Numbered from the stretch's first letter, positions 846-61,800 are shown. The stretch is DNA of 64,000 nucleotides from IMGVR_UViG_3300031951_000003:186001-250000; one strand, 5' to 3'. Program-made: numbers and translations. The notes: generated from the letters alone by a model not told the origin.

Positions 846-890
846 ACTTTAATAAATATGTTTTTATTTCTATTCTACCATCAGTTTTAT

Positions 891-1835
891 TTAAAACTTC
901 AAACAACCAAAACTATTCATGTATCTTACTACTTTTTCCAAGTAACCAATACTTGTTTGTTGACCCGAACCTTTGTTTGGAAAATAATTGGCAATTGGTT
1001 TGTTTTGTAAAACCATAATTTTCAGTTCAGGTTTAGATTGTGGAAAGGGTTGATATAACGTTTTGTCACACGGTGCAGCATAATTCGGGTCTTTTGTTTC
1101 ACACCATCTAGTGATTAGACCTGGCATGTTGTGTGCAACTATTGCTAAATCCATTGCGTTGTTACCTGTCCCATCAATTCCCTTGATACCCTTAGTTCTA
1201 ACTGCAATCGGATTAACGGATGGACCTGTTCCATTACCTACTTTTAAGGCTCTTTTGTAATCATCATTGATTCTGTGTAATGTCCCTATTCCTTGTTTCA
1301 AAGAACTGAAAGAATCTGAATAGGAACCAACTTTTTTATCTAAACCATAATCATTCCAAGTTTTTTCGGTAAATTGTGCTGAACCCAAACTCATTTGTTT
1401 CTGAGGTTTACCTGAAATTTTATTCACCAAATTTAACCCACCCACAGCGGATTTTGGGAGAAATCCAAACCCTATCGAATGTAAAAATTCTGCCGCGTCA
1501 TCACTCCATTCACTATAAGTACGGAATAAAGTTTCCCTTCCAATAATTCCGATTGCGGCTTTGGCCATGAAAAGCAGTGTATTAGCATCAACCCCAAGTT
1601 CACTCATCAATTTTTGTTTGTTTTGAACTACGTATTCTGCAAATGGTCTTACGTCCTCGGGAATACACGGGTATTTCTTCTCTAAACTGATATTTTCATT
1701 TTGTTTACTGACTCTTGCGTTTTCACGTGAATTATCTAGCCCAAATGAAGTTATTCCTGGTCCTGTTTGTTCTTTAAGAATTCGTAAGATAATATTCTCT
1801 AAATCCGTCTCAGTTAATTTGATACTTTTTTTCAT
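891..1835 (-). CDS. Leader-B protein (MKKSIKLTETDL...LKEQ), possibly lysozyme-like fold
   Basis: Start reassigned to ATG 1835 below TATTTAT (1842-1848); payload unassigned. Confidence 0.6.
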   Translation of the reverse strand: MKKSIKLTETDLENIILRILKEQTGPGITSFGLDNSRENARVSKQNENISLEKKYPCIPEDVRPFAEYVVQNKQKLMSELGVDANTLLFMAKAAIGIIGRETLFRTYSEWSDDAAEFLHSIGFGFLPKSAVGGLNLVNKISGKPQKQMSLGSAQFTEKTWNDYGLDKKVGSYSDSFSSLKQGIGTLHRINDDYKRALKVGNGTGPSVNPIAVRTKGIKGIDGTGNNAMDLAIVAHNMPGLITRWCETKDPNYAAPCDKTLYQPFPQSKPELKIMVLQNKPIANYFPNKGSGQQTSIGYLEKVVRYMNSFGCLKF

Positions 1836-1967
1836 TATGAAATAAATATCCACCAAAAATGACTTTTAGTGATGAGGGAAATAATTATTATTCTTTCAGA
1901 ATAATAATAAGAATTAATAAAAATAAAAAAAAAAGAAAAAAAACTAGTAATACTAGTTCTAGGGATT

Positions 1968-2249
1968 TTAGCAAACCGCCACACAAGAATCGAAACCTAA
2001 AATATCCTCTATAATTTTTGTTACTTCATTACAAGGGTCGTCCAAGAAACCAATGTGAGAGTCGGGTTCATCTCTCCGATTGTCTTTGATGGTTAGAAAA
2101 ACAGCATGAGAATCGGGAATCCATTTATTTGATTTGTCATCATATTTTTGGGTGGGGACGATTTGTATTTCTTTGATTAAAATATCCCCTCCGAAGGAGG
2201 TGTTCAACGAAGACTCAACAAGTCGTTTTATTTTTCCAATCTTGTCCAT
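1968..2249 (-). CDS. Hypothetical protein
   Basis: ORF track, co-oriented and overlapping the upstream gene. Confidence 0.55.
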   Translation of the reverse strand: MDKIGKIKRLVESSLNTSFGGDILIKEIQIVPTQKYDDKSNKWIPDSHAVFLTIKDNRRDEPDSHIGFLDDPCNEVTKIIEDILGFDSCVAVC

Positions 2250-2614
2250 GTCATGTCAGAATTTAAAACCACAGAATAAAGATGTTTTTTATTCCATTCG
2301 TTTGGACCAATAAGTGACAAAGTCTTGGACCCATCAGGATTCTCATATAAGTGATATATCTCCCCAATAATCGGTTCAAATCTATAGTTTGACTCGTAGA
2401 CCTCTTGTTGGATAATCATCGAATTTTGGAGGTCCTGTGCTTCTTTAATGAGCTCTTCATATCGTCTCTTAACCACTCGGTCGACCTTATTGAGACCGTG
2501 TTTTTTAAAGGATGTTAAGTCTTGGGGTTCAATCTTTGGGGCACCTACATGGGTTGGGTAGGGAATTACCATTGGTTGTAGATTAACCTTATCGATATGA
2601 GATTGAGTTGACAT
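2228..2614 (-). CDS. DUF2452-like protein
   Basis: YPTHVGAPKIEP...FEPIIGEIYHLY...LSLIGPNEW resembles the Bacteroidota DUF2452 family (recalled, not searched). Confidence 0.6.
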   Translation of the reverse strand: MSTQSHIDKVNLQPMVIPYPTHVGAPKIEPQDLTSFKKHGLNKVDRVVKRRYEELIKEAQDLQNSMIIQQEVYESNYRFEPIIGEIYHLYENPDGSKTLSLIGPNEWNKKHLYSVVLNSDMTWTRLEK

Positions 2615-2668
2615 AAAAAAAAAGTCCCTTTATGGGACAATTTTATAAAATATATTTTGTAAAAACAA

Positions 2669-3166
2669 TTACTGACCTTTAATCATTCCGATTCCGTGTT
2701 TTAAAAATTCTTTCGCTCTTGGTGAGAGATGTTGCATTGCATATACTTTTTCAATATCCTTAACTAATTCTTCACCGTGTTCGTTCTCCTTGTAGAGTTC
2801 TATGATTTTGTCCATGGCCTTACAACACTCTTTCTTTGTTTCATCAAAATAATTGTAGGGTTTGAATCCTTTAAGATGAGTCATTATTTGGTGTGCTAAA
2901 TGTTCTCCACCATCCGTAACCTTCGGATGAAGTCTCAAGGTTTTGAGCAATTCTAACTTATCAACTAATCCCCTAACACCGTTCTTTCTTAATCTTACTC
3001 CCTCAATATAATCATCATCTTCATCATCGCCCATAATTTCTTCTAACGATTTAGTGTTACCAGCGTGACAAAACTTTCTATCATCTTTTTTCTCGTCTTC
3101 AGAAATATTATAAAATTTCCTGATTTCTTCTTTTTCAGATTCGGTTAAATAAAATCTTTTACTCAT
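2669..3166 (-). CDS. Leader-E protein (MSKRFYLTESEKEEIRKFY)
   Basis: Leader motif; ATAAATA at 3171-3177. Confidence 0.6.
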   Translation of the reverse strand: MSKRFYLTESEKEEIRKFYNISEDEKKDDRKFCHAGNTKSLEEIMGDDEDDDYIEGVRLRKNGVRGLVDKLELLKTLRLHPKVTDGGEHLAHQIMTHLKGFKPYNYFDETKKECCKAMDKIIELYKENEHGEELVKDIEKVYAMQHLSPRAKEFLKHGIGMIKGQ

Positions 3167-3200
3167 GTCTATAAATATAAGTTTCTTTCAAAATCTCCGA

Positions 3201-5025: not shown

Positions 5026-5049
5026 TTTAAAATGTTTTCTTTATAAATA

Positions 5050-5262: not shown

Positions 5263-5298
5263 TAATAATAACTATTGTATTTATTATATAGAATAATC

Positions 5299-7556: not shown

Positions 7557-7571
7557 GTTTATAAATATAAT

Positions 7572-10486: not shown

Positions 10487-10550
10487 AGAATATAAATACC
10501 ATAATCCCCCACAAATAAATTATGGTTAAATAACCGAAAGGGGTTTAAGA

Positions 10551-11874: not shown

Positions 11875-11887
11875 ATTAAATAAATAC

Positions 11888-13297: not shown

Positions 13298-13325
13298 AAT
13301 TTATAAATATCCATTAAAAAAAACT

Positions 13326-13350
13326 AAAATCCCCACCTTGTGAGTGGGGA
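13326..13350 (-). terminator. Intrinsic terminator (duplicated at 13764)
   Basis: TCCCCAC-cttgtga-GTGGGGA with A-tract. Confidence 0.75.
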
Positions 13351-13372
13351 CCTAATTTATCTTAATTAATCA

Positions 13373-13729
13373 TTAATTATATTGACCTCTTTCATCCCAC
13401 ATATTCAAACACTCATAACCTTGTTCCTCAAAATTGTTTTCAGTGTCTATTAAGTTCACATTCTTTAATTCATCAAATGAACATAAATCAATACCATCAA
13501 AATCAGCGAAATCACAATCCCTCAGGGATAAGTATGTCAAAGTGCTTGGTAAGTTTGTTAATATTTTTCTAACTTGTTTTGAACTTGCACCCACCATCAA
13601 AACAAGCCCATTTTTTTTATCGAACTGATAATGTGGCTCATCTAATCTATACTCATCTTGTTCTTTAATTACCTTTTTTACTAATCTTATCATGTCAGAT
13701 TCTGTTAATCTTACTATTTTCTTCGACAT
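13373..13729 (-). CDS. Leader-B protein with short LRR-like segment
   Basis: MSKKIVRLTESDMIRLVKKVIKEQ; LPSTLTYLSLRDC. Confidence 0.6.
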   Translation of the reverse strand: MSKKIVRLTESDMIRLVKKVIKEQDEYRLDEPHYQFDKKNGLVLMVGASSKQVRKILTNLPSTLTYLSLRDCDFADFDGIDLCSFDELKNVNLIDTENNFEEQGYECLNMWDERGQYN

Positions 13730-13763
13730 ATTATTATTTTGATAATAAATATCTCAAATAAAT

Positions 13764-13790
13764 AAAAATCCCCACCTTGTGAGTGGGGAT
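13764..13790 (-). terminator. Intrinsic terminator, identical core to 13326
   Basis: aaaaatccccaccttgtgagtggggat. Confidence 0.75.
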
Positions 13791-13798
13791 TAGTTAGT

Positions 13799-14050
13799 TT
13801 ACTCTTCAGTAACGTCAGGTTTGCCCTTGTTAATCCATTTGTCGATTGAACCGATTCCGAAAGAACCGAGAACCAACCATAAAAATGCATTGAAGATGAA
13901 TTCATTGATAACAAGGTCTTTTCCTAAAGAACCAGTTACGATGTCTGCAATCGCAAACCCTGTCATCATTACAAAAGCTAAAAATCCAACGACACTTTTT
14001 TCATTGATTGAGTTGTTGTCGTTAAACAACTGTGAGAAAAATTTTTTCAT
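13799..14050 (-). CDS. Two-TM membrane protein (holin-like topology)
   Basis: Two hydrophobic helices and a charged C-terminus. Confidence 0.5.
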   Translation of the reverse strand: MKKFFSQLFNDNNSINEKSVVGFLAFVMMTGFAIADIVTGSLGKDLVINEFIFNAFLWLVLGSFGIGSIDKWINKGKPDVTEE

Positions 14051-14160
14051 ATTTTGGTAATTTACTTACCAATAAATATTTTTGTATTGACGAAGGACAA
14101 TCATTTAAATAAAAAATCCCCTCAAGATTTATGAAGGGATTACAATTACAATTTCTTATT

Positions 14161-14478
14161 CTAAAAATATTTTTTTGCTTCAGTTCTTGCCAAATTGTCA
14201 AAATAGTTATCAACATCTTTATTATTACCCAAATAAGCTAATATACCATTTTTTATAGGCACAACCTCATTTCCCTCATCGTAAGTAATTTTACCATTTT
14301 TAATAGTATAACAGTGATATTGTAAATAATTGGTCTTACCCTTTAATTTAACTTCAACTTTCATACAAACCACTTGATTGCCTTGCCTGTTCATATATCG
14401 TCTTTCCAGTTCAATATTGACAGTTGCACCAATTCGATTTAAAAATTTAATTATTGATATGACAAAATCTCTATCCAT
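14161..14478 (-). CDS. Hypothetical protein
   Basis: ATAAATA just upstream. Confidence 0.5.
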   Translation of the reverse strand: MDRDFVISIIKFLNRIGATVNIELERRYMNRQGNQVVCMKVEVKLKGKTNYLQYHCYTIKNGKITYDEGNEVVPIKNGILAYLGNNKDVDNYFDNLARTEAKKYF

Positions 14479-14491
14479 GAAAAAATAAATA

Positions 14492-14842
14492 TTAATTGTA
14501 GTCCTCTTCTGGACAGGTCATACGATAAATTTCGAATAGATATTCACCAAACCAATCTTTAACAACATCAGTAACATAACTATAAACATCATCATAATCA
14601 TCCCCTAAGGAATCGACAAAATCTTCATCTTTGGTCAGGAAATCATCTATCGCTATTCTAATTACATTATCTGCATAATCGAACTCATCTCCGAAATCAT
14701 CACACAATGTTGGAAAATCTAATTCTGCATTACGAATGAAGGGTTCGATATTATCTTTAGATAATCGTCTCCTTAATCTTATTTGATAGTCTTCGATTAA
14801 AAAATTGTATTGGGTTTCGGATATGATAAATTTTTTGGACAT
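14492..14842 (-). CDS. Leader-A acidic protein
   Basis: MSKKFIISETQY; D/E-rich payload. Confidence 0.6.
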   Translation of the reverse strand: MSKKFIISETQYNFLIEDYQIRLRRRLSKDNIEPFIRNAELDFPTLCDDFGDEFDYADNVIRIAIDDFLTKDEDFVDSLGDDYDDVYSYVTDVVKDWFGEYLFEIYRMTCPEEDYN

Positions 14843-14859
14843 TAATTATAAATATTCAA

Positions 14860-15681
14860 CTAAAAATTAATACCCGCTCCGAACTGTCCGTATTTTACCA
14901 CGGGGTCATAATCTAATTTCAGAGTGAAGTTTTTAAAATCCTTCATACCACCAAATTTGAATGTGACAAAGTTGTCTTTCGATTTGGGAAAAGTTATTTC
15001 CCCAACATCATCTTTTCCTCTATAGAGTATTCTTTCATTTGCAAGTCCAACCATAGCATGAACTCCAAATCTATTAATCCTCTTTCCTGCTCCGATATAA
15101 AAACTATTTTGTTTGACTAAATCTGAGATGAGAGGGAAATCTACTAAATTAATGGTCCCATACGGAAAATATGTTGAACGGTCTCTTCGATATGTTGTGT
15201 TGAAATCAAAAACGAAATAACCTTTATTACCTATTGTAAAAAACGCACCCATCTGATTATTTGTGGTATGGTGAAGACCAAAACTCATGATTGGTTTTTT
15301 TCCTCTAATTGTGTCACGCCTTCCGTCGTTGTAGTAATAAATTCTTGCTGGTTGTCTATAACCCCAATCATTAAAATACCACATAGGTGAAAAACTATTC
15401 CACCCAAATGTCGGTGCTCCCCACATATTCCATCTATTCCATCCCCATCCATCAAACCATGGGTCACGAACCACAACAGGCTGGTTAGACCTTGGTTTAT
15501 TGAATTCAGTTGGAGTAGAGTTTCTCCAATTACTTGTTGTATTCGATGATGTTGTCGAAGTTCTCGAAGTTGACTGTGTACTTGATTGTGATGGCGGAGA
15601 TGTTCTCCAAGATGATGTTTGAGAGAATACGAACAATGGCATCAATAATACCATTTCAAAAATCAGAATAAGCTTTCTCAT
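14860..15681 (-). CDS. Secreted protein, probable outer-membrane beta-barrel with low-complexity N-terminus
   Basis: Signal ending VFSQ; Ser/Thr- and Trp/Gly-rich linker; amphipathic strands; C-terminal GAGINF. Confidence 0.6.
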   Translation of the reverse strand: MRKLILIFEMVLLMPLFVFSQTSSWRTSPPSQSSTQSTSRTSTTSSNTTSNWRNSTPTEFNKPRSNQPVVVRDPWFDGWGWNRWNMWGAPTFGWNSFSPMWYFNDWGYRQPARIYYYNDGRRDTIRGKKPIMSFGLHHTTNNQMGAFFTIGNKGYFVFDFNTTYRRDRSTYFPYGTINLVDFPLISDLVKQNSFYIGAGKRINRFGVHAMVGLANERILYRGKDDVGEITFPKSKDNFVTFKFGGMKDFKNFTLKLDYDPVVKYGQFGAGINF

Positions 15682-15731
15682 AGTAAATTGATTTTATATC
15701 TATAAATATAATATAAAAAAATCAATTTTGA

Positions 15732-16196
15732 TTAATTACATGAATTCATAAAATCTTTAGCCTGTGAAATCAAAGATTTTACTTTGACAGAATAAGTGCC
15801 AGCCTTACATTGTGGTTTAGGACAATAAACTCTATCTAATAATTTATAATAATCTTCCTCACCACCTATACTTTCAATTTTTCTAAAATCCTGCCATAAC
15901 TTGTAATCTTCAACAGATTGTTTCCAATTGTCATATCTTGCGTGACCCCTATATTCACCAGTAGCCGTCTTCGGTCTAATTTTGGCGTATTTCATACCAA
16001 AACAATTATTATTGGCTTTGAATATTTCACTTTCGAAATGACCTGTTTCTAATATTGCTTGGGCAATTGCTATTTCAGGAAACCTGATTCCTGAATTCTT
16101 CACATAACATGCAAATTCTGATGGAGAAAAGTTCTCCACTTCTGAATCAACACCCATGATTTCTTTAATTCTTGTTATGTCCTCGTAAAGATTCAT
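15732..16196 (-). CDS. Leader-C protein with GH73/FlgJ-type glucosaminidase domain
   Basis: MNLYEDITRIKEIMG; IAIAQAILETGHF...NNCFGMK...YDNWKQSVEDY. Confidence 0.75.
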   Translation of the reverse strand: MNLYEDITRIKEIMGVDSEVENFSPSEFACYVKNSGIRFPEIAIAQAILETGHFESEIFKANNNCFGMKYAKIRPKTATGEYRGHARYDNWKQSVEDYKLWQDFRKIESIGGEEDYYKLLDRVYCPKPQCKAGTYSVKVKSLISQAKDFMNSCN

Positions 16197-16207
16197 AAAA
16201 ATAAATA

Positions 16208-16534
16208 TTAGTCTAAACTACTGTTGATAACATTCCCGTCAGTTCCCACTACAACGAATCCGACCCTGTAATTTCGTGGGATATCAAAATAAGGAAGATA
16301 CTTCATCGTATGATAATCAACCAAATAATGGGGGTCTAATTCCCTCTGGTACATATTATCTTTTGTCATCTCTGAATCATTTACATAAATCCTTAATATC
16401 AATCTATTGATATCCCCAATCTCATAAACTTCAATATGGTCAATCATTGGATAGATACTCATAATGACAGATGAGTTCAATAACTTTGTTATTGGTTTGT
16501 TAATGTATTTTTCCAAAAATTGTTTATCCACCAT
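16208..16534 (-). CDS. Hypothetical protein
   Basis: ATAAATA upstream; IYPMIDHIEV resembles 31446. Confidence 0.55.
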   Translation of the reverse strand: MVDKQFLEKYINKPITKLLNSSVIMSIYPMIDHIEVYEIGDINRLILRIYVNDSEMTKDNMYQRELDPHYLVDYHTMKYLPYFDIPRNYRVGFVVVGTDGNVINSSLD

Positions 16535-16557
16535 ATAGAATAAATAGAAATAAAAAT

Positions 16558-16585
16558 AAAAAACCCCTCCTTGTGAGAGGGGTTT
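16558..16585 (-). terminator. Intrinsic terminator
   Basis: aaacccctccttgtgagaggggttt. Confidence 0.7.
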
Positions 16586-16588
16586 GTG

Positions 16589-16996
16589 TTAAAATCTTTT
16601 TTTTGTTCGAAGTTTTATTGGACCATCTTTTTGATATCTGTTCCAATAATCTCTTCCTGGTTTAGAAACATCCGAACCAATCCTGTCTTCTTGTCCGAAA
16701 CTCCATTTATTTCTCGGTACATCCCTTTGGGTAATGTTCTTATACATTTCAAAGTCATCTGGTCCAAACTCAATTTCTTCATCATAATCAAATTCTTCAG
16801 GGTCAACAGGTCTATCGTCTTCATCAAACCAACTGTCTCTGTGACCTAAAATACCCCTGTTTTCAGGTTTCATTTTCATGAAGTGTCTTTTAGGCATTTC
16901 AGTTCCCATATCCAACGAATCAAGTTCATGTTCTTTTAAAACTCTTTTAACCAATCTTATCAAATCAGATTCGGTCAATCTTACTATTTTTGACAT
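16589..16996 (-). CDS. Leader-B protein
   Basis: Start moved to 16996: MSKIVRLTESDLIRLVKRVLKE. Confidence 0.65.
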   Translation of the reverse strand: MSKIVRLTESDLIRLVKRVLKEHELDSLDMGTEMPKRHFMKMKPENRGILGHRDSWFDEDDRPVDPEEFDYDEEIEFGPDDFEMYKNITQRDVPRNKWSFGQEDRIGSDVSKPGRDYWNRYQKDGPIKLRTKKRF

Positions 16997-17078
16997 ATAA
17001 ATTATTTTATTATAAATACTATTTGAAATAAAAAAAAATCCCCTCACTTAGGAGGGGGGTTCTTAAAATTATGTTTGA

Positions 17079-17474
17079 CTACTTCCAACTATCCAAATTT
17101 AATGTCCTAATTTGAGAAATTATTTGGTCATTTATTTTGTTGTAAGAATTGAAATGATAAATTGAGTTATCAATTAAATTCATGAGAGCTTGTTTTCTTG
17201 GTTGTGGCATGTTCAGACCAGATACCTTATTTTTAAGGGATGCCAACTCAGTCATAACTTTGACATTCGGCTCATCTAATTTTTTTAATTTCTTAATCAG
17301 TCTATCGAGTCTTGACAAGTTCTGAAAATAATCCATTCCATATCCTCTTTTAACACCCTTAACACCTCTATAAAAATCACCCAATGCGTCGAACGGACCT
17401 TCGTTTGTTTCTTGTTCTTGTAAAACTTTCTTTACAATTCTATTTAAATCTGATTCAGTTAGTTTTTTTGCCAT
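17079..17474 (-). CDS. Leader-B helical protein
   Basis: MAKKLTESDLNRIVKKVLQEQ. Confidence 0.65.
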   Translation of the reverse strand: MAKKLTESDLNRIVKKVLQEQETNEGPFDALGDFYRGVKGVKRGYGMDYFQNLSRLDRLIKKLKKLDEPNVKVMTELASLKNKVSGLNMPQPRKQALMNLIDNSIYHFNSYNKINDQIISQIRTLNLDSWK

Positions 17475-17487
17475 GTAGATAAATATA

Positions 17488-20680: not shown

Positions 20681-20720
20681 TTATAAATATTACAACAATA
20701 AATTATGGCGGAATGAGATG

Positions 20721-21713
20721 TTATATCAAACGTTCGAATGAATTTTTTACCCTTTGTTTAAAAGAAGGGTTTTCCATATCAGGTGGAATTTGAAGTTCAC
20801 CGGAACCTATCGTAATTATACTTTTACCATCAGAGGGTAACCAAATACTTTTTTGGTGGGGCTTTATAAATTTTTCAATTTCAAAAATATCAGGTTCCTT
20901 GAAATTAATACAACCCTTACTCATTTTCCTTCTTTTACAACTCTGAGGGGAAAGGTCCGCGGTTGTTAAAGCATCTATTCTTGGTCTTTTTTTCGTTCCA
21001 TGAAATGCAGTTACAGTTTCGTTACCATCAAAGGTTTCAAATGACATGTATTTCTCTCCATAAGTTGCAATGTCTGATTGTCTCGCAATCTCATCTTCCA
21101 AAGTATCTTTGATTCCTGCAGTTCTTCTGAATATTCCAGCAGGGGTACTTTGTTCAGGCCATCTATCCTCTGTAGGAGCAAAACATTGCTCCATTCTCTT
21201 AACAAACCCTTCCATCCCTTCTTTTTTCAAATTTGCAACACTGTCCTTAAATTTATTCCAAACCTGTTTATAAAAATCTTGAACAACAAACTTGTCGCTT
21301 TGGTCCTCTTTACCTGTTAAAACCAAAAATGTTCTAACAAGTTCATATCCAGGATTGAATAGATAAATTCTGGCTTGAGAATCATCCAATATGGTAAATT
21401 TCTCATTTCCCATTATTTTATTTTTTCTGAGATAATCAACTTGGTCTTGAACTTGTTTGGATGCACTTGGTATTTTGTTAGTGAATAGTCGTTCAACCTT
21501 AGACTTTTCGGCAAACGCTTTACTAACAACAGACGGGTCTATCTTTTGGGGATACTTTCCGTCTTTTATTCGAGGGAAAACCCTCGAGGCTTCTACTGAA
21601 CCCATAGGTGATGACACGGGTCCACCTTGATTGAACAAACCTTCTTTTGTATAAAAAGGGGAAGTTTGTTCCAATAAAAAATTGTATTGTGATTCTGTGA
21701 TTAGATATTTCAT
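20721..21713 (-). CDS. Leader-A protein with L,D-transpeptidase (YkuD)-like domain
   Basis: MKYLITESQY; TPAGIF; AFHGT...MSKGCINF (H...C dyad). Confidence 0.6.
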   Translation of the reverse strand: MKYLITESQYNFLLEQTSPFYTKEGLFNQGGPVSSPMGSVEASRVFPRIKDGKYPQKIDPSVVSKAFAEKSKVERLFTNKIPSASKQVQDQVDYLRKNKIMGNEKFTILDDSQARIYLFNPGYELVRTFLVLTGKEDQSDKFVVQDFYKQVWNKFKDSVANLKKEGMEGFVKRMEQCFAPTEDRWPEQSTPAGIFRRTAGIKDTLEDEIARQSDIATYGEKYMSFETFDGNETVTAFHGTKKRPRIDALTTADLSPQSCKRRKMSKGCINFKEPDIFEIEKFIKPHQKSIWLPSDGKSIITIGSGELQIPPDMENPSFKQRVKNSFERLI

Positions 21714-21753
21714 CAACAATAAATATCACGACCCCATTGTCTGAGATTTAATT

Positions 21754-22368
21754 TTAAACTTTTGATATTGTTTGATTAAATTGGTCTGAATTAATTTGTT
21801 GAGAAATATAATTAGAAAGAAGTTGCTTGTATTTTTGTTCACCGAATTTTTGAATGTATCTATCTTTGTATTTGGTTATTGATGGTTCCACGGATTTTAA
21901 TAAACCTTCGATAGTTTTTAGTTCTGCTTGGATGACATTTTTATTTGTTGCAACCTTTTTCACCACTTGGACCTCAACTGGAGTTAATCTTGTTTTGGAA
22001 AGTAATTTTTCTGCCAACGCAACCGACCCTCTAACACCAACCTGATTTAGTTCAGGTATGAGACCCAAAAGTTTACCCGATAAAGGGATTAAAGAAAATA
22101 GAGTAATAATGGTTGCAGCTTTCTTATTTCCTTCTTGGAAATGTCTTGCAGCATCTCCAAGCCCAACCATAGATGATATAAATGGTCCAATAACAGGAAT
22201 TAGAACAGAAACAATACCCAAAAAAACATTCATGTCATGACTCGTCAAAGCTTTGTCCCAACCTTTTACAACGCTTTTTTGTTGACCTTGGGGAACATAA
22301 TTTCCCCAACCCGTCATGCTCTGTTCTGAAATTAATTTTAATTGTCTTTCAGTTATGATGTACTTCAT
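21754..22368 (-). CDS. Leader-A protein with hydrophobic helical hairpins (pre-toxin-like)
   Basis: MKYIITERQLKLISEQ; LIPVIGPFISSMVGLGDAA...EGNKKAA...LFSLIP. Confidence 0.6.
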   Translation of the reverse strand: MKYIITERQLKLISEQSMTGWGNYVPQGQQKSVVKGWDKALTSHDMNVFLGIVSVLIPVIGPFISSMVGLGDAARHFQEGNKKAATIITLFSLIPLSGKLLGLIPELNQVGVRGSVALAEKLLSKTRLTPVEVQVVKKVATNKNVIQAELKTIEGLLKSVEPSITKYKDRYIQKFGEQKYKQLLSNYISQQINSDQFNQTISKV

Positions 22369-22405
22369 AACAAATAAATATCACGACCCAATTATATGAG
22401 ATGGT

Positions 22406-22951
22406 CTATTTAAGGACATACACCCAAGCGTTTTGCTTGTAATTACCGAATTTTTTGAGTGCTGCGGTTGTTCTGTGCCAACCTTCCAATAAGTCATACT
22501 TTCCGTCCTTTGTTTCAACCACGATAATTGGTTCAGAAGACAAACCACCCTTTTCCAAATTAGATTGTTGAAAATCGTGTCTTTCGGTGTCTTTGGTAAT
22601 GTCAGTTCTTCTGAAACCTTCAATCTTTTTTCTCAAATCTTTCTGAACAAACTCTGTGAATGATTCCAACGACAAATCCAATATTTTATTTTCCCAATGA
22701 CCTTTACCGTGCCCTTCAACAAAACTAACGAGATAACTTCTCACAAGGTCTTTATATTCTTCAGGACTTTCATCTTTTATGTCTTTTGTGTTTCTATACA
22801 ACCAATCTCTTAAAACATATTCAGGCCAATCAATTCCCGTAATTTCTTTACTCTTATTTCTAAGATAATTCATATAACCTTCACGAGTTTCAACAATAAT
22901 CCCCATCAATTCTTTTACTCGTGATATATTTTCGTTCAAGTTCATCATCAA
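22406..22951 (-). CDS. Leader-C protein with ParB/Srx-like domain
   Basis: EPIIVVETKDGKYDLLEGWHRTTAA. Confidence 0.65.
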   Translation of the reverse strand: MMMNLNENISRVKELMGIIVETREGYMNYLRNKSKEITGIDWPEYVLRDWLYRNTKDIKDESPEEYKDLVRSYLVSFVEGHGKGHWENKILDLSLESFTEFVQKDLRKKIEGFRRTDITKDTERHDFQQSNLEKGGLSSEPIIVVETKDGKYDLLEGWHRTTAALKKFGNYKQNAWVYVLK

Positions 22952-22985
22952 TAAATATCACGACCCACTTGTCTGAGATGGTCAA

Positions 22986-23552
22986 CTAATTGAAAAGTCT
23001 TTGGATATTATCAACGTATGGAGAATTATTTGGCTCATTGACCCAAACATACGCTTTTAATGGCTTGTTTTTCATTTTTGCCAAGAAAACTCTATGAGCG
23101 CCGTCAACAACTTCATAACCCTTATCATTTTTTCTTAACGTTATTGGTGGGAGTTTACCAAAATTGACTTTCCTCGGGTCTGACGGGTTTTCTCTGAAAT
23201 ATTTATCTGATTTACCTGAAACATAGTCATCAAATTTTTGTTGTCTATCAATAACAAATTCATCTTCTAAATTAATTTCATTTGGGTCAACAAGTATCGG
23301 TCCCGTTAAAACCCAATCTTTGATTTCGTAAATTGTTCTTCTCCATTCTGCAAACGGTAACCCCATTTCATCATTATATTGATAGTCGATTATTTCCTTT
23401 TGTTCAGGAAACATTTTCAAAAGCAAATTATAAATCTCCTCAGATTTTTCTCGGGTAACAATTTTATTGACAAAGTCCCAATCAAATTCTTCAGATACCA
23501 AACCCATCAATTCTTTTACTCGTGATATATTCTCGTTCAGATTCATCAACAA
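22986..23552 (-). CDS. Leader-C protein with ParB/Srx-like domain
   Basis: PPITLRKNDKGYEVVDGAHRVFLA. Confidence 0.7.
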   Translation of the reverse strand: MLMNLNENISRVKELMGLVSEEFDWDFVNKIVTREKSEEIYNLLLKMFPEQKEIIDYQYNDEMGLPFAEWRRTIYEIKDWVLTGPILVDPNEINLEDEFVIDRQQKFDDYVSGKSDKYFRENPSDPRKVNFGKLPPITLRKNDKGYEVVDGAHRVFLAKMKNKPLKAYVWVNEPNNSPYVDNIQRLFN

Positions 23553-23573
23553 TAAATATCACGACCAATTTGT

Positions 23574-24470
23574 TTAAGATGGTGTCTGAACAATGTCTTT
23601 GAACTTGTCCAAATACACAGTTCTTTCAGAATCAACATTTATTAGTTGTGTGTTAGGTGATAAATAATTATCCTTCACTTTAATATAATACTGACCGTCA
23701 TCTACTATACCGAGTTTTGAAATAAACTCATCAATAAACTTTTTGTTCGAGGTCGACTTCGACAACAAACCTTCCAACCCTTTCTTGGTCAAAATTGTGG
23801 AAGGGTCTCCTGTCTTTTCTGATGGTCTTTCTTTCGTGGCTTCATACTTTCCCAAATATTGTTCCAAAACCATTTCAATATCTCGGCTGTCGTATTTAAA
23901 GTTGGGGTCTGTTTTTGCTATTTCATTTCTCTTAGAAACATTTTCCACCAATAGATAAATTGGGGTATGTAATAGAATTTCTTTGAAGGTTACATTCGGT
24001 AAATATTTTTGCAATTGGTTGTCGACAGTATCCACAAATATCTTTTTCCAAGGCCCTGTTTTGATTTCTTGAGCGACATACCATAATCTTGCGTCAGTTC
24101 CCTTAAGATATTCCTTTTCGAATGGATTTTCAGGAACAGTATCACCATTTTCACGATAAATACCCGAAACAATTCCAGCATCTTCTCTTTCTTTTGCCCA
24201 CTGTCTTATATTTGGATGGTCCAATTTAAGTCTTCTTTCCTCACCTTCTCTCCCTTCTTCACCCGTCCCACTAAAATCATCAGAAGCAATCACAACCCAT
24301 TGATTTGGGTCCTTGGATTCATAATAAGGAACAGCATTCATTTGTTTCAACAAATAAGATTTACCCGCAGAAGAAGTTCCATCCAATAAGACTACCGATT
24401 TATCATCAGCTTGTTCAACCAGCAATCCCATCACTTCCTTAATTCTTTTTATATTTTCGTGTAAATTCAT
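23574..24470 (-). CDS. Leader-C protein with P-loop kinase domain (chloramphenicol phosphotransferase-like)
   Basis: VVLLDGTSSAGKS Walker A; IFVDTV. Confidence 0.65.
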   Translation of the reverse strand: MNLHENIKRIKEVMGLLVEQADDKSVVLLDGTSSAGKSYLLKQMNAVPYYESKDPNQWVVIASDDFSGTGEEGREGEERRLKLDHPNIRQWAKEREDAGIVSGIYRENGDTVPENPFEKEYLKGTDARLWYVAQEIKTGPWKKIFVDTVDNQLQKYLPNVTFKEILLHTPIYLLVENVSKRNEIAKTDPNFKYDSRDIEMVLEQYLGKYEATKERPSEKTGDPSTILTKKGLEGLLSKSTSNKKFIDEFISKLGIVDDGQYYIKVKDNYLSPNTQLINVDSERTVYLDKFKDIVQTPS

Positions 24471-24538
24471 AACAATAAATATACCGACCCATTTGTTTAG
24501 ATGGTGATAATGAGGTGGTCACAATGAAGGGACAAGGA

Positions 24539-24610
24539 CCGAACCGACGAAGTCGGTCGGGGACCGTCGGCCGAAAAAACGGGGGAAAATACCGACGGAG
24601 TCGGTTTCCG
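24539..24610 (+). other. GC-rich tandem hairpins with C-GNA-G triloops
   Basis: ACCGAC-GAA-GTCGGT at 24543-24557 and ACCGAC-GGA-GTCGGT at 24591-24605, both extendable through bulges. Confidence 0.75.
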
Positions 24611-24646
24611 TTTGCGAATATCTGGTTAAAATAAGAAAAAAAGATA

Positions 24647-24943: not shown

Positions 24944-24967
24944 TAATAAATACTACACGCACATGTC

Positions 24968-27307: not shown

Positions 27308-27384
27308 ATTACAATAAATACTTTGGGAAATAAAAAACCCCCTTCGTGAATGAAGAGGGTCTTGTTATAGAAATTATTTTTTTT

Positions 27385-27858: not shown

Positions 27859-27942
27859 AATTTTAATTTTATTATAAATATATTCGGAAATAAAAAACCC
27901 CCTTCGTAATTGAAGAGGGTCTTGTTATTTTGAAATGTTTTA

Positions 27943-30407: not shown

Positions 30408-30462
30408 AAAATATGTTTCCAATAAATACTCCCAAAAATTTTTTTCTCAGTTGAAGGATAAA

Positions 30463-39107: not shown

Positions 39108-39171
39108 CCAAAAATAAATATCTGAGGTCCAAACAATTGTTTTGAATATTTCTTTGTTATATTTATTAATA

Positions 39172-44049: not shown

Positions 44050-44080
44050 CAAAAATAGTAAAATATTTTGTATCTTCAAA
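44050..44080 (-). promoter_or_regulatory. Bacteroidota sigma-A promoter of the umuD operon
   Basis: TTTG-N19-TATTTTTG. Confidence 0.7.
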
Positions 44081-45107: not shown

Positions 45108-45329
45108 GTAAATAAATATCCATGAAAGGGAAAGGTCAGGGAGAAAGTTCAAAAATCAAAAAGTTATATGAATTTTGATTGGATGAGGGTTGGTCTGTTT
45201 TTGAATACTTGAGATTTGAATCTTGATTAAACAAAATCTTCATCGGATATCACATACTATAATTGTTGCTGGTTGACATGAAGCCAACTATCTCTCTGAT
45301 TTTATCACAATCCCACCCGACCTTATAAC

Positions 45330-50626: not shown

Positions 50627-50647
50627 AAAAATAAATACCTTTATTAA

Positions 50648-51308: not shown

Positions 51309-51454
51309 ATTATTTATATTTTCACAAATATAGGAAAATTTTGTGACAAAAAAAACCCCTCTAATGAGGGGCTCTTTTACTTTTTACACCATCCGAAACA
51401 TACTTTACCAAAAGTTATTTTCGTGATGAAATTACAGATTTGTTTCATGATTTA

Positions 51455-53337: not shown

Positions 53338-53529
53338 GTTTTATAAATACTTTGGACATAAAAAAACCCCCGATTTCTCGGGGGCCTTTACTTATTTCTT
53401 GATTTTAGAAACAAGCTTTAGAATATGTGGTCCCACCACAACTCCGACAACGACACCTAATAAAAAGTGCCAATGCCATAAAAATTCTAATTGTTCCATA
53501 GTTTTTTAAAAGGTTTAATTTTGTTTAGA

Positions 53530-53976: not shown

Positions 53977-54090
53977 TTTCGTTTTATTTAACGGTTTATA
54001 AATAAAAAACCCATCTTCACCTACAACTAAGTTGAGATGGGATGGGATTTATATTCTCTTATAAATATCTTTGAAAATCCGAAAATCGTC

Positions 54091-55785: not shown

Positions 55786-56037
55786 GATTATAAATACAAA
55801 ACAAAATAAAAAACCCCTCCTGATTGGAGAGGTTTGAAATTAATTGGATGGTTTGTCTGATTCGATTTTATTAACAACGTCTTTGAGGTGTCTTAGTAAA
55901 AGCTCGTGGTCATAATCGTTTTTCTCACCATAAACTTTCAATTGCCCTGAGACGTAGTCTAAAGAAAAAATCGCATCTTTTACTTCTTGTTTTGTCATAG
56001 TTTAAAATTATAAAAAATTATTTCAAATAAACCAAAT

Positions 56038-56840: not shown

Positions 56841-56871
56841 CAAAGATAATCATTTCACACAATTCACCAAA
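56841..56871 (-). promoter_or_regulatory. Bacteroidota sigma-A promoter
   Basis: TTTG-N19-TATCTTTG. Confidence 0.8.
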
Positions 56872-59294: not shown

Positions 59295-59311
59295 ATCTAT
59301 AAATATTTGTG

Positions 59312-59343
59312 CAAATATAAGACACAAACCCTATTATGCCAAA
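59312..59343 (-). promoter_or_regulatory. Bacteroidota sigma-A promoter (followed by a TATTTAT motif)
   Basis: TTTG-N20-TATATTTG, then TATTTATAGATATG. Confidence 0.7.
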
Positions 59344-60599: not shown

Positions 60600-60808
60600 T
60601 CTTTTCTGTGTTTGTAAAACCAATAGGAGTGAATGATGATAACGCACGAATTTACAACAATTGTCGGACCTGCCGAAATTCCGAATCCATAAACTAACCA
60701 AAAAATTGCGCCAACCGTGTTGACCGCTCTAAGACGGAAAACGTCCTCAATTAGGAATGAACCTAAAATGAGGACGCTCCCGATATATCCATATATTTCC
60801 CACATCAT
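60578..60808 (-). CDS. Small inner-membrane protein (YgjV-like)
   Basis: Three TM segments; RLRAVNTVGAIFWLVYG. Confidence 0.6.
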   Translation of the reverse strand: MMWEIYGYIGSVLILGSFLIEDVFRLRAVNTVGAIFWLVYGFGISAGPTIVVNSCVIIIHSYWFYKHRKEWTSKKK

Positions 60809-61260
60809 TTCGCGAATGCTTTATCTGCCCAAGTCTTTGCTCCAACCAATGTCCACAAGTTCATATCACACATGTCAGGGAAACAAGTTCTCATGGTTCC
60901 AACGGTGATTACCTTTAAGAAACCAAGGTCGATTGAATACCACTTACCACCTTTTGTAGTGTAAACGTTCATCCACTGACCGTATTCGTTCTTAACTTGA
61001 ATGTTGACCAAAGAATTCTTGCCATATCCACGGATTACATCAACAGTTCCTTTGGTGTCGTGGATGTTGATAAACCCAGCTTTGCATTTGCCTGCGATGC
61101 GGAATTCATATTCTTTGTTGATATCTTTCAGGTGGTTTGAAACTGAAACGTCGAGAGATTTACCTTTAACGAAAGTTCTGAATGAACCGTAAAAAACGTC
61201 AGAAGAATAGGCGTTGTTGGTGTTGATGTTTACTGCGGGAAGGGTAGTGGTTTGTGTCAT
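60805..61260 (-). CDS. Hypothetical early protein
   Basis: Start moved to 61260; sigma-A promoter upstream. Confidence 0.6.
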   Translation of the reverse strand: MTQTTTLPAVNINTNNAYSSDVFYGSFRTFVKGKSLDVSVSNHLKDINKEYEFRIAGKCKAGFINIHDTKGTVDVIRGYGKNSLVNIQVKNEYGQWMNVYTTKGGKWYSIDLGFLKVITVGTMRTCFPDMCDMNLWTLVGAKTWADKAFAK

Positions 61261-61279
61261 ATTGTTGTGTTTTGTTACA

Positions 61280-61311
61280 CAAAGATAGGGAACCACAATT
61301 TACCAGCCAAA
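61280..61311 (-). promoter_or_regulatory. Bacteroidota sigma-A promoter
   Basis: TTTG-N20-TATCTTTG. Confidence 0.8.
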
Positions 61312-61317
61312 TATATT

Positions 61318-61740
61318 TTAAACTTTATCACAAATGTGTGGTTGGAAACAAGCTTGTCCCCCACCTTCCACATATCCAATTCTTTCATTTATATTTGTTG
61401 AACGAAGGTATGGTGATTCTTGTCCACAGATTACACATCTGTCTTTCTCATCCATCTTTGGGTCTCCTTGGAGAACACATCCCAAATGGTCATATCCTAC
61501 AAGATAATCATATTCAACTTCAGAAGTATCTTTACCACAGATTGAACAAGTCCAAGGTCGAATGATTTTCTTTACACTTCCATCAGGAGCAATTTCCATC
61601 ATGAAATGTTCATCATCTTGAGGAGGACCCTCAAGGTTTCTTCTTTCTTGCCAGTATTTGTTTCTTGCAAGACCACCAAGTTCGAAGTCGTTAGGTGTGT
61701 TTAGGATTTCTTCTGCTGTTAGTGTTACAGTGATTCCCAT
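61318..61740 (-). CDS. Hypothetical protein with two CxxC motifs
   Basis: CSICG, CVICG. Confidence 0.55.
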   Translation of the reverse strand: MGITVTLTAEEILNTPNDFELGGLARNKYWQERRNLEGPPQDDEHFMMEIAPDGSVKKIIRPWTCSICGKDTSEVEYDYLVGYDHLGCVLQGDPKMDEKDRCVICGQESPYLRSTNINERIGYVEGGGQACFQPHICDKV

Positions 61741-61800
61741 ATGATTTGTTTTTTAAAAACTAAAGGAAAATATTCAAAAGACAAATCTATTTATATTAAT

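What the first reader, a model, noticed from the sequence alone, without database searches (positions are those of the whole stretch)
852..61800. Two-tier promoter code: sense TATTTAT before cargo genes versus Bacteroidota sigma-A promoters before leaderless genes
Seen: TATTTAT lies about 4-25 nt upstream of the ATG on the coding strand of both minus-strand genes (852, 1842, 3171, 7561, 10492, 11880, 13303 and the cassette arrays) and plus-strand genes (5299, 39172, 61801), so it follows gene orientation. It is the reverse complement of the core of the T4 late promoter TATAAATA. Five exact TTTG-N19/20-TAnnTTTG promoters (30719, 44050, 56841, 59312, 61280) precede genes without leaders, and no SD motifs are evident. 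Established: TTTG/TAnnTTTG is the Bacteroidota sigma-A consensus. Inference: TATTTAT is a phage-specific late promoter giving near-leaderless mRNAs, read by a phage sigma factor or RNAP encoded outside this window.
Basis: partly seen in the sequence, partly recalled or inferred. Interest (0 to 1): 0.6.

Follow-up and report, generated by a model that had tools for sequence, protein, structure and literature searches.

The report
Phage-specific TATTTAT promoter, leaderless genes
A 321-kb freshwater jumbo phage, probably of Bacteroidota, places the conserved seven-base signal TATTTAT at fixed distances before about 100 genes; it is most likely a phage-specific promoter whose messages start at or just before the start codon, and it sits beside a smaller set of ordinary host-type promoters.

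Summary
The window lies in a complete 321-kb jumbo myophage. TATTTAT is the top 7-mer upstream of genes: 102 of 395 ORFs, against 11 ± 3 in shuffles and 22 antisense.

Its distance to the ATG is bimodal: 4-6 nt (leaderless geometry) or 12-17 nt (short A-rich leader). It lacks the -33 TTTG. It is avoided inside coding DNA on both strands. It is absent before tightly packed genes. It is kept in orthologues of a relative with about 50% protein identity while the flanks diverge.

Host-type TTTG-N18-20-TAnnTTTG promoters also exist, about 28 in the genome. They show the same two spacings and drive the tRNA clusters, the tmRNA and the operon holding the phage's only sigma factor. That sigma is a shortened paralogue of Bacteroidota sigma-A. 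No phage RNA polymerase was found.

TATTTAT also precedes portal, tail-fibre, sheath and PolB units, not only cargo genes. Three of the five listed sigma-A promoters have leaders.

There is no RNA evidence. The start sites and the factor that reads the motif are inferred.

The parts
852..858 (-). TATTTAT, N6 before ATG 845 (endolysin-like domain protein, ORF 3-845)
1842..1848 (-). TATTTAT, N6 before ATG 1835
3171..3177 (-). TATTTAT, N4 before ATG 3166
5043..5049 (-). TATTTAT, N17, A-rich leader, before ATG 5025
5278..5284 (+). TATTTAT, N14 before ATG 5299
7561..7567 (-). TATTTAT, N4 before ATG 7556; terminator-like hairpin just upstream
10492..10498 (-). TATTTAT, N5 before ATG 10486
11880..11886 (-). 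TATTTAT, N5 before ATG 11874, inside a 13-nt intergenic gap
13303..17485 (-). Array of 10 small-ORF units, each with its own TATTTAT. Motif starts: 13303, 13745, 14072, 14485, 14848, 15702, 16201, 16540, 17012, 17479. Spacers: N4-6 in six units, N15 in two, N20-21 in two. Several units have an intrinsic terminator upstream: 13353, 13791, 14141, 16585, 17057.
20683..24952 (-). Array of 7 units, 6 of them paralogues, each with (G)GTCGTGA-TATTTAT then N2-5 then ATG. Motif starts: 20683, 21719, 22374, 22951, 23552, 24475, 24946.
27314..31972 (-). Cassette array with a conserved terminator (AAGACCCTCTTC..GAAGGGGGTTTTTT), then TTTTTGGGAAAA, then TATTTAT, then a small ORF. Motif starts: 27314, 27874, 28464, 28856, 29397, 30023, 30422, 31214, 31966. 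Spacers: N5-6 or N14-15, and N25 at 31966.
30719..30750 (-). Host-type TTTG-N20-TATTTTTG, N4 before ATG 30714, sitting in the same cassette scaffold
32080..32111 (+).
39114..39166 (.). Divergent pair: TATTTAT 39114-39120 (-), N6 before ATG 39107; TATTTAT 39160-39166 (+), N5 before ATG 39172
44050..44080 (-). Host-type TTTG-N19-TATTTTTG, N4 before GTG 44045; the start codon is uncertain and the next ATG is at 43904
45112..45118 (-). TATTTAT, N4 before ATG 45107
50631..50637 (-). TATTTAT, N4 before ATG 50626; terminator upstream
51325..51332 (-). Host-type -7 element TATATTTG, N16 before ATG 51308
53343..53349 (-). TATTTAT, N5 before ATG 53337 (MORN-repeat protein); terminator upstream
53998..54004 (-). 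TATTTAT, N21 before ATG 53976
55790..55796 (-). TATTTAT, N4 before ATG 55785; terminator upstream
56841..56871 (-). Host-type TTTG-N19-TATCTTTG, 21 nt before ATG 56819 (leadered)
59299..59343 (-). Tandem promoters: host-type TTTG-N20-TATATTTG (59312-59343), then TATTTAT (59299-59305), N4 before ATG 59294
61280..61311 (-). Host-type TTTG-N20-TATCTTTG, 19 nt before ATG 61260 (leadered)
61788..61794 (+). TATTTAT, N6 before ATG 61801; the likely true start of the ORF listed from 61741

Best explanation
R-TATTTAT-W is the core -10/-7-class element of a promoter class specific to this family of freshwater jumbo phages, which probably infect Bacteroidota, perhaps Cytophagales.

The element works without a -33 element. 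It is placed so that transcription begins in one of two ways. With N4-6 between motif and ATG, transcription begins on or within 1-2 nt of the A of the ATG, giving leaderless mRNA; this is about half of the units. With N12-17, it begins about 8-12 nt upstream, in an A-rich stretch that matches the Bacteroidetes-type adenine motif at -14 to -11.

It is the phage's main promoter, with at least 100 units covering structural, replication and accessory genes.

A second, smaller tier uses the host consensus TTTG-N18-20-TAnnTTTG. That tier drives the tRNA clusters, the tmRNA, about 25 mostly small genes and the operon holding the phage's only sigma factor.

The likeliest reader of TATTTAT is host core RNA polymerase carrying that phage sigma. 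The sigma is a shortened paralogue of Bacteroidota sigma-A. It keeps the helix that reads T-12/A-11, which both motifs share. It differs in region 1.2-2.1 and region 3, the parts that face the downstream half of the element, where the motifs differ (TTTG against TATW).

Shown: the motif, its geometry, its conservation and avoidance, the absence of -33, and the nature of the sigma and of its own promoter.

Inferred: that the motif is a promoter, where transcription starts, the timing, and which factor reads it.

My sub-odds: the motif is a core promoter element about 0.8; the phage sigma is its reader about 0.5.
For: Enrichment and strand: 102 of 395 sense against 22 antisense and 11.4 ± 3.3 in shuffles.

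Fixed bimodal spacing. Without any gene calls, 65 of the 195 TATTTAT copies in the genome have ATG at offset 4-6, and none has GTG there.

Same geometry as the known host element. TAnnTTTG-to-ATG spacers peak at 4-6 and 15-19 nt. In F. johnsoniae the -7 element ends at G-5, 4-5 nt from the start site (PMC6847099).

Not a general ribosome signal. Only 1 of 165 genes with an intergenic gap of 10 nt or less has it, against 100 of 230 of the rest.

Terminators are enriched (32 against 11.2 ± 3.7) and lie 10-45 nt upstream of the motif, leaving no other conserved element between terminator and ATG.

The motif is avoided in coding DNA on both strands: 33 against 67.6 ± 7.7 sense, and 31 against 51.8 ± 5.5 antisense. 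TAHHTTTG is not avoided.

The -33 TTTG is present in 26 of 49 host-type sites but only 3 of 191 TATTTAT sites.

Conservation. A 304-kb relative (sigma 66% identical) has the same top 7-mer and the same spacings. Among 161 orthologue pairs (median 50% identity), 34 of 44 keep TATTTAT (Fisher p = 2e-18), none swaps to the host type, the flanks are unalignable, and N4-6 and N12-17 interchange. Three more complete relatives have 11-19 copies of RTATTTAT-N5-ATG against 0-2 in controls.

Cytophagales genomes hold 5-19 copies per 1.5-4.4 Mb.

There is one sigma gene. It is 46-48% identical to the 287-289-aa Aquirufa/Cytophagales sigma. FISYAVWWIRQSILQ is identical, region 3 is about 20 aa shorter, and region 1.2-2.1 is diverged with a 6-aa insert.

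The sigma operon is preceded by TAnnTTTG in 47 of 52 distinct relatives.

No RNA polymerase family was detected.
Against: There are no RNA data of any kind. No listed run that holds the phage is RNA, so no transcription start site has been seen.

The phage sigma's regions 2.3-2.4 are identical to host sigma-A, and its 4.2 recognition helix is nearly so (TKERVRQIKEK against TRERVRQIKEK). It could therefore simply read host-type promoters.

TATTTAT promoters lack the -33 element that an intact region 4 would be expected to use.

None of the three tRNA clusters with a visible promoter, nor the tmRNA, uses TATTTAT. The motif is thus seen only before protein genes, which a translation signal would also predict.

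Gene starts came from a crude first-ATG ORF caller. About 100 candidate unit starts carry neither motif.

Giant ORFs of 1,673-2,562 aa have no detectable homologues and could hide an unconventional polymerase.
Confidence: 0.6

Rival explanations
1. TATTTAT is a promoter, but it is read by the host sigma-A holoenzyme after remodelling by unidentified phage proteins that disable -33 recognition or change -7 preference. This would resemble Thermus phage P23-45 gp39 or T4 AsiA/MotA. The phage sigma would then only reinforce or replace sigma-A at host-type promoters.
For: The phage sigma's DNA-reading helices are almost the same as host sigma-A's. TATTTAT keeps T-12/A-11 and T-8, T-6 of the host element. 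[quoted passage not shown] Two substitutions interconvert the two elements within one cassette scaffold.
Against: T-7 and G-5 are nearly invariant in host promoters (PMC6847099), and both are changed in TATTTAT. No candidate remodelling factor was recognised; the two proteins upstream of the sigma, including its 172-aa operon partner, have no family match. The sigma is conserved at 63-100% identity in all 80 related loci found with it as query, which suggests an essential, specific role.
Confidence: 0.2
2. TATTTAT acts in the mRNA (UAUUUAU) as a translation-initiation or stability signal for a non-SD ribosome or a phage factor. It is not a promoter.
For: The N4-6 spacing resembles SD-to-AUG distances. 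The motif is seen only before protein genes, never before tRNA or tmRNA genes. Bacteroidota lack SD sequences (PMC6847099).
Against: It is absent from 164 of 165 operon-internal genes, which instead carry the A-rich -14 to -11 motif. A second mode at 12-17 nt and further sites at 20-35 nt exist, for example portal N29 and sheath N35. It is avoided on the antisense strand of genes too. Terminators immediately upstream leave no other promoter candidate. The geometry is the same as that of the established host -7 promoter element.
Confidence: 0.08
3. TATTTAT is read by an unrecognised phage-encoded RNA polymerase, for example one hidden in a giant ORF as in crAss-like phages.
For: ORFs of 2,562, 1,684 and 1,673 aa have no PHROG match, and the 2,562-aa ORF also has no match in phage records. 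Short AT-rich promoters without a -35 element are typical of phage polymerases.
Against: There are no hits to PF00562, PF00623 or PF00940 (the PF00940 control rang nowhere, so that result is weak). The motif shares TA..T.T register and start-site geometry with the sigma-A -7 element. The similar 'moraphage' lineage was also reported to lack RNA polymerase genes (PMC12619734).
Confidence: 0.07
4. TATTTAT is mainly an operator for a phage regulator, or a recombination hot-spot of mobile promoter-terminator cassettes, and the true core promoter is degenerate AT-rich sequence.
For: Terminator + TATTTAT composites flank small variable ORFs in arrays, as PeSLs do in T4-type phages (PMC2839356, PMC4122927).
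Against: The motif also precedes conserved core genes outside the arrays, and it is the only conserved element there. Exact distance to the ATG is not needed for recombination.
Confidence: 0.05

Closest known systems
Bacteroidota sigma-A (sigma-ABfr) promoters: -33 TTTG / -7 TAnnTTTG
   Same: The host-type tier matches the consensus fully, including the 18-20 nt spacer. TATTTAT shares T-12, A-11, T-8 and T-6 and the same distance to the presumed start point.
   Different: TATTTAT has A where the nearly invariant T-7 sits and W where G-5 sits, and it has no -33 element. It is rare in candidate host-lineage genomes.
T4 late promoters (TATAAATA at -10, no -35; read by gp55/gp33 with the sliding clamp) - from established knowledge
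   Same: A single short AT-rich -10-class element, no upstream element, used for structural genes, and specific to the phage.
   Different: The sense-strand sequence differs: TATTTAT(W) matches only as the reverse complement. No gp55-like protein was recognised. Here the candidate reader is a full sigma-A-like factor with regions 1.2, 2 and 4. The motif also precedes replication and accessory genes.
Thermus phage P23-45 middle and late promoters (extended -10 class, host sigma-A with gp39/gp76)
   Same: A -35-independent phage promoter class used by host core polymerase, while host-type -10/-35 promoters form another tier (PMC7403470).
   Different: TGn precedes only 15 of 101 TATTTAT sites. 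This phage encodes its own sigma. No gp39-like protein was identified.
PeSL composite promoter-terminator cassettes of T4-type phages
   Same: Stem-loop terminator plus promoter units flank small, variable, often paralogous ORFs in arrays (PMC2839356, PMC4122927).
   Different: PeSLs carry host sigma-70 early promoters. Here the promoter is the phage-specific TATTTAT. A role in shuffling was not tested.
Leaderless transcriptomes (Deinococcus, mycobacteria, archaea)
   Same: The -10-class element sits so that +1 falls on the start codon, and ATG is used exclusively at that position.
   Different: Here it is in a phage of an SD-less phylum whose model member has 87% of leaders longer than 10 nt (PMC6847099). 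No 5' ends have been mapped.
'Moraphages', freshwater jumbo phages of Bacteroidota (PMC12619734)
   Same: About 300 kb, mainly freshwater, predicted Bacteroidota hosts, a sigma factor among the core genes, no RNA polymerase genes.
   Different: Membership was not tested because their genomes are not on hand. That paper contains no promoter analysis.

Membership tests
Bacteroidota sigma-A promoter (applied to TATTTAT sites) | -7 element with nearly invariant T-12, A-11, T-8, T-7, T-6, G-5 | tested here: not met
   TATTTATW gives T, A, T, A, T, W at those positions, so T-7 and G-5 are changed in all sites (definition from PMC6847099).
Bacteroidota sigma-A promoter (applied to TATTTAT sites) | -33 TTTG about 18-20 nt upstream | tested here: not met
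   3 of 191 TATTTAT sites against 26 of 49 host-type sites.
Bacteroidota sigma-A promoter (applied to the TTTG/TAnnTTTG sites) | Both elements with the correct spacer, no G at -10/-9, placed before genes | tested here: met
   9 in the window against 1.7 expected. There are 49 full sites in the genome, and about 28 genes have a -7 element at a promoter-like distance. The nn dinucleotide contains G in 1 of 28. These sites precede tRNA clusters and the tmRNA 6-20 nt from the mature 5' end.
Bacteroidota sigma-A promoter (either class) | Transcription start 4-5 nt downstream of the element | not testable with these tools
   No RNA run holds the phage.
T4-type late promoter | TATAAATA on the non-template (sense) strand at -10 | tested here: not met
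   The sense strand reads TATTTAT(A/T). ATAAATA in sense orientation is found upstream of only 22 genes, not far above the shuffle mean.
T4-type late promoter | gp55-type minimal sigma plus gp33 and clamp dependence | not tested
   Only a profile built from sigma-70 regions 2 and 4 was searched, and it found no second sigma. No gp55 model was available to me by accession.
Extended -10 promoter | TGn immediately upstream of the -10 element | tested here: not met
   15 of 101 sites.
Leaderless mRNA | 5'-terminal AUG | tested here: inconclusive
   The geometry fits: N4-6, only ATG and no GTG at that offset. No 5' ends are available.
Sigma-70 family, group 1/2, Bacteroidota sigma-A type (the phage sigma) | Regions 1.2, 2 and 4 present, no region 1.1, and the Bacteroidota-type region 2.3-2.4 sequence | tested here: met
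   Pfam r1_2, r2 and r4. 46-48% identity to Cytophagales 287-289-aa sigmas, with FISYAVWWIRQSILQ identical. Region 3 is about 20 aa shorter, so this is a variant.
PeSL-like mobile regulatory cassette | Conserved terminator stem-loop plus promoter flanking variable small ORFs | tested here: met
   Alignment A1 of nine units and terminator enrichment.
PeSL-like mobile regulatory cassette | Mediates recombination or gene shuffling between genomes | not tested
   Cassette content was not compared between close relatives.
Moraphages (PMC12619734) | Phylogenetic placement by TerL/MCP and the shared core orthologue set | not tested
   Only descriptive traits agree.

The most novel reading that the evidence does not exclude
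A sigma-A gene captured from the host lineage has been retuned in the parts that face the downstream half of the -7 element, changing the preference from TTTG to TATW and losing the need for -33. This gives a whole family of freshwater jumbo phages a private promoter code. That code launches roughly half of their transcription units as truly leaderless mRNAs in a phylum that has no Shine-Dalgarno mechanism and rarely uses leaderless genes.
Probability: 0.4. Interest if true: 0.7.

Novelty: new variant of a known kind. Interest (0 to 1): 0.55.

Why it matters
Transcription in phages of Bacteroidota is barely charted, and these uncultured freshwater jumbo phages are known only from metagenomes.

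A simple, exact 7-mer with fixed geometry has three uses:
- It gives correct gene starts and transcription units for hundreds of related contigs. Standard gene callers may pick wrong starts, as at 61741 against 61801.
- It offers a natural orthogonal promoter/sigma pair for Bacteroidota genetics.
- It is a clean test of how sigma regions 1.2, 2.1 and 3 set specificity at the downstream half of the -7 element, because phage and host sigmas share the -12/-11-reading helix.

If the N4-6 class is truly leaderless, the phage shows that ribosomes of an SD-less phylum can be fed mostly leaderless messages.

Tried and rejected
- Megablast of 25-kb window pieces against phage and plasmid records found no match (one search was a length slip).
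- tblastn of the 2,562-aa ORF against phages found no match.
- PHROG scans of six giant ORFs found nothing for the three largest and only unknown-function or weak matches for the rest.
- RNA polymerase families PF00562, PF00623 and PF00940 gave no hit. For PF00940 the control rang nowhere, so that result is weak.
- A profile search for a second sigma-like protein in all six frames gave only noise, best E = 0.017. That ORF has no Pfam or PHROG family.
- The sequencing-run search found 20 DNA holders in 15 studies, from lake-water, freshwater and 'fungus'-labelled metagenomes, and no RNA run.
- A search for a third motif, or one-mismatch variants, before the 102 unit starts that carry neither signal gave nothing clear. 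Many of those starts are artefacts of my crude ORF caller: collagen-like repeats at 1-5 kb and the tRNA region.
- Canonical TTGACA/TATAAT matches are not enriched, 101 against 89.9 ± 11.
- An exact TAnnTTTG-N3-6-ATG before the sigma operon was found in only a few relatives. A wider 200-nt window showed the element in 47 of 52.
- The proteins next to the sigma have no family match.
- Rfam found nothing in the window.
- The P23-45 primary paper is not held.
- The idea that the TTTTTGGGAAAA of the cassette scaffold serves as a -33 for TATTTAT was rejected, because its distance to the motif varies from 11 to 24 nt.
- The glf-based host hint is only suggestive. The best hits are freshwater Cytophagales and other Bacteroidota at 57-61%, but Acholeplasma and Clostridium score about the same.

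Full report
**Context.** The window is bases 186,001-250,000 of a 321,139-bp IMG/VR virus record. The record has direct terminal repeats and a CheckV completeness of 100%. GC content is 35%. The genome encodes a tail sheath, collagen-like tail fibres, a portal protein, a family-B DNA polymerase and an SbcC-like nuclease, so it is a jumbo myophage. It also carries 24 tRNA genes and a tmRNA gene outside the window. It has no close relative among deposited phage or plasmid records. IMG/VR, however, holds at least 80 related contigs whose sigma protein is 63-100% identical, several of them 304-326 kb long. Near-identical DNA occurs in runs labelled lake-water, freshwater and 'fungus' metagenomes, from 15 studies.

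A Bacteroidota host is indicated by several lines. The promoter consensus fits (below). SD-like 4-mers are depleted upstream of genes, 5.8% against a 9.3% background. Adenines are enriched at -14 to -11 before operon-internal genes, which is described as characteristic of the Bacteroidetes (PMC6847099). The genome encodes an SprB-repeat protein and a protein that pairs a CarboxypepD_reg domain with an outer-membrane beta-barrel. The best cellular matches of its UDP-galactopyranose mutase and its sigma are freshwater Cytophagales such as Aquirufa. The recently named 'moraphages' look alike: freshwater, up to 307 kb, Bacteroidota hosts, a sigma in the core set and no RNA polymerase. I could not test membership, and that paper does not analyse promoters (PMC12619734).

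**The observation.** TATTTAT occurs 63 times in the window against 31.0 ± 5.3 in shuffles. In total, 43 of the 63 copies lie within 30 nt upstream of a same-strand ORF start.

Across the genome it is the commonest 7-mer in the 40 nt upstream of ORFs. It is found before 102 of 395 ORFs, against 22 in antisense and 11.4 ± 3.3 in dinucleotide shuffles. In intergenic DNA the count is 128 against 23.8 ± 4.7. The extended consensus is R-TATTTAT-W.

It is 4-6 nt in 51 genes and 12-17 nt in 32 genes, with a tail of 20-35 nt that includes the portal, sheath and tail-fibre genes. The result does not depend on my gene calls: of all 195 copies anywhere in the genome, 65 are followed by ATG at offset 4-6, and none by GTG. 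In the N12-17 class the motif is followed by an A-run. Adenine reaches 88% at -11 relative to the ATG.

**Promoter or translation signal.** Five results point to DNA-level, unit-start function.

- The motif is present before only 1 of 165 genes that follow their neighbour by 10 nt or less, but before 100 of the 230 others.
- Intrinsic terminators are enriched, 32 against 11.2 ± 3.7. They end 10-45 nt upstream of many TATTTAT copies. In the 26.6-31.5-kb array the order is terminator, TTTTTGGGAAAA, TATTTAT, small ORF, with nothing else conserved.
- TATTTAT is selected against inside coding sequence on both strands, relative to synonymous-codon shuffles: sense 33 against 67.6 ± 7.7 and antisense 31 against 51.8 ± 5.5. 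The host -7 word is not avoided, 97 against 102.
- The established host -7 element shows the same two spacings to the ATG in this genome, 4-6 and 15-19 nt. In F. johnsoniae that element ends at G-5, 4-5 nt from the start site (PMC6847099). A start on the A of the ATG is therefore the direct prediction for N4-5.
- In orthologues the two spacings interchange freely: 9 A-A, 12 B-B, 6 A-B and 2 B-A. They are thus two ways of mounting one signal, not two ribosome geometries.

One observation cuts the other way. No tRNA cluster and no tmRNA uses TATTTAT.

**Conservation.** A complete 304-kb relative, with a sigma 66% identical and 31% GC, has TATTTAT as its top upstream 7-mer (92 of 384 ORFs) and the same bimodal spacing. 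Of 161 reciprocal-best orthologue pairs (median identity 50%), 34 of the 44 that carry TATTTAT here also carry it there (Fisher p = 2e-18). None changes to the host type, and none of the 12 host-type units changes to TATTTAT. Sequences flanking the motif are unalignable. Three further complete relatives have 11-19 copies of RTATTTAT-N5-ATG against 0-2 for the reversed control. Even the most distant relatives (sigma 63% identical) show 5 sense against 0-1 antisense copies in 20 kb. Five Cytophagales genomes of 1.5-4.4 Mb have only 5-19 copies each, a density at least ten-fold lower.

**The second tier.** Full TTTG-N18-21-TAnnTTTG matches number 49 in the genome. About 28 genes have a -7 element at a promoter-like distance, 18 of them at 0-7 nt (mostly 4-6) and 10 at N15-19. 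The -33 TTTG is present in 26 of 49 such sites in the two genomes, against 3 of 191 TATTTAT sites.

These are real promoters, because they precede RNA genes. tRNA-Glu, tRNA-Leu and tRNA-Pro, each the first gene of its cluster, lie 6-8 nt downstream of the element, and the tmRNA lies 20 nt downstream. Other host-type units include ClpP, a GH25 lysozyme and a DUF932 protein.

The two-gene operon that ends with the sigma gene is also host-type. In this phage the signal is TATATTTG, then N4, then ATG. In the 66%-identity relative it is a full TTTG-N19-TATATTTG. Among 52 distinct relatives, 47 have a TAnnTTTG in the corresponding 200 nt, where chance would give about 13% (my estimate), and only 1 has TATTTAT.

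Sites 56841, 59312 and 61280 have 17-21 nt before the ATG. Site 59312 is followed by a TATTTAT, so those two form a tandem.

The leaderless host-type arrangement TAHHTTTG-N4-ATG also exceeds its control in Cytophagales genomes, 26-65 against 11-24. The host lineage evidently can use such messages, though rarely.

**Who reads TATTTAT.** Only one sigma gene is detectable, and no multisubunit or T7-type RNA polymerase. The sigma is 265 aa and has regions 1.2, 2 and 4. It is closest to the 287-289-aa primary-type sigma of Aquirufa and other Cytophagales, at 46-48% identity, against 39% or less for sigmas in deposited phage records.

In the alignment, the segment that reads -12/-11 (FISYAVWWIRQSILQ) is identical in phage and host. 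The region 4.2 helix differs by one residue (K for R). Region 3 is about 20 residues shorter. Region 1.2-2.1 is diverged and carries a 6-residue insert. All of these features are conserved across six phage sigmas.

From established structural knowledge of sigma-70 holoenzymes, regions 2.3-2.4 read the upstream part of the -10 element, while regions 1.2 and 2.1 face its downstream part and the discriminator. The two motifs share TA at the upstream end and differ at the downstream end (TTTG against TATW). That is where the two sigmas differ. This is a rationale, not a test.

The same data equally allow the phage sigma to read host-type promoters while another factor handles TATTTAT, which is why I give the sigma assignment only about even odds.

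**Comparison with known systems.** Functionally this resembles T4 late promoters (one short AT-rich element, no upstream element) and the -35-independent middle and late promoters of Thermus phage P23-45 (PMC7403470). It is a member of neither class. The sense-strand sequence is not TATAAATA, and TGn precedes only 15 of 101 sites. It also fails two defining features of the host sigma-A promoter. The terminator-plus-promoter units around small paralogous ORFs resemble the PeSLs of T4-type phages (PMC2839356, PMC4122927). One unit of the 26.6-31.5-kb array carries TATTTTTG (host type) where its neighbours carry TATTTAT, so two substitutions move a gene between tiers.

I found no description of this motif in the paper library.

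**Verdict.** The pattern is real, conserved and under selection. It is most likely the main promoter of a family of uncultured jumbo phages, built to give leaderless or very short-leadered messages. A host-type tier covers the stable RNAs and the sigma operon. The start sites, the timing and the identity of the reading factor remain untested.

Noticed in passing
genome 125,442-125,835; 134,989-140,972; 161,395-161,483 (outside the window; L008, L009, L010): The phage carries a tmRNA and 24 tRNA genes. The tmRNA and the first gene of three of the tRNA clusters sit 6-20 nt downstream of host-type TAnnTTTG elements, never TATTTAT.
   Followed up: yes
window 61741-61803: The + strand ORF listed from ATG 61741 abuts the divergent gene that starts at 61740. 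TATTTAT at 61788, then N6, then the in-frame ATG at 61801, suggests that 61801 is the real start. Standard callers may mis-start genes in this phage family.
   Followed up: partly
window 30715-30750 compared with 29382-29445 and 30008-30070 (alignment A1): Within one repeated terminator/TTTTTGGGAAAA scaffold, one unit has the host-type TATTTTTG followed by N4 and ATG, while its neighbours have TATTTAT. The two promoter types are two substitutions apart.
   Followed up: partly
window 19652-24470: Six tandem paralogues (180-341 aa) with no family match for the one that was scanned. Each has a conserved (G)GTCGTGA-TATTTAT upstream box and similar N-termini (MN.NENI...).
   Followed up: no
window 41585-49297 and 59334-60701: A block of cell-like genes: a UmuC/Y-family polymerase, UDP-galactopyranose mutase, a GT2 glycosyltransferase and a UvrC-like GIY-YIG plus RNase H-domain protein. 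Most lack their own TATTTAT and are tightly packed.
   Followed up: partly
genome 1-5,400 and the last ~200 bases (L002, L019): The ends of the record overlap and consist of GTTCCAGAAG-type collagen-like repeats. My ORF caller produces spurious ORFs on both strands there.
   Followed up: no
genome 126,060-129,335 (L008:6060-9335): A 1,091-aa protein that pairs a CarboxypepD_reg domain with an outer-membrane beta-barrel, unusual cargo for a phage. TATTTAT lies 21 nt upstream.
   Followed up: no
Cytophagales genomes G005-G009: TAHHTTTG-N4-ATG (the leaderless geometry) occurs 26-65 times per genome, against 11-24 for the reversed control. This suggests a small native leaderless gene set in these Bacteroidota.
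   Followed up: partly
genome 33,354-41,042; 17,107-22,161; 41,355-46,376: ORFs of 2,562, 1,684 and 1,673 aa have no PHROG match, and the 2,562-aa ORF also has no match in deposited phage records. Two of the three have TATTTAT at N13-14.
   Followed up: partly
window 14053-14084 (+), 49001-49032 (+), 26411-26442 (-): Three further exact TTTG-N20-TAnnTTTG matches. Two are antisense inside minus-strand genes, and one lies 109 nt upstream of a 65-aa ORF. They may be chance (1.7 expected) or antisense or small-RNA promoters.
   Followed up: no
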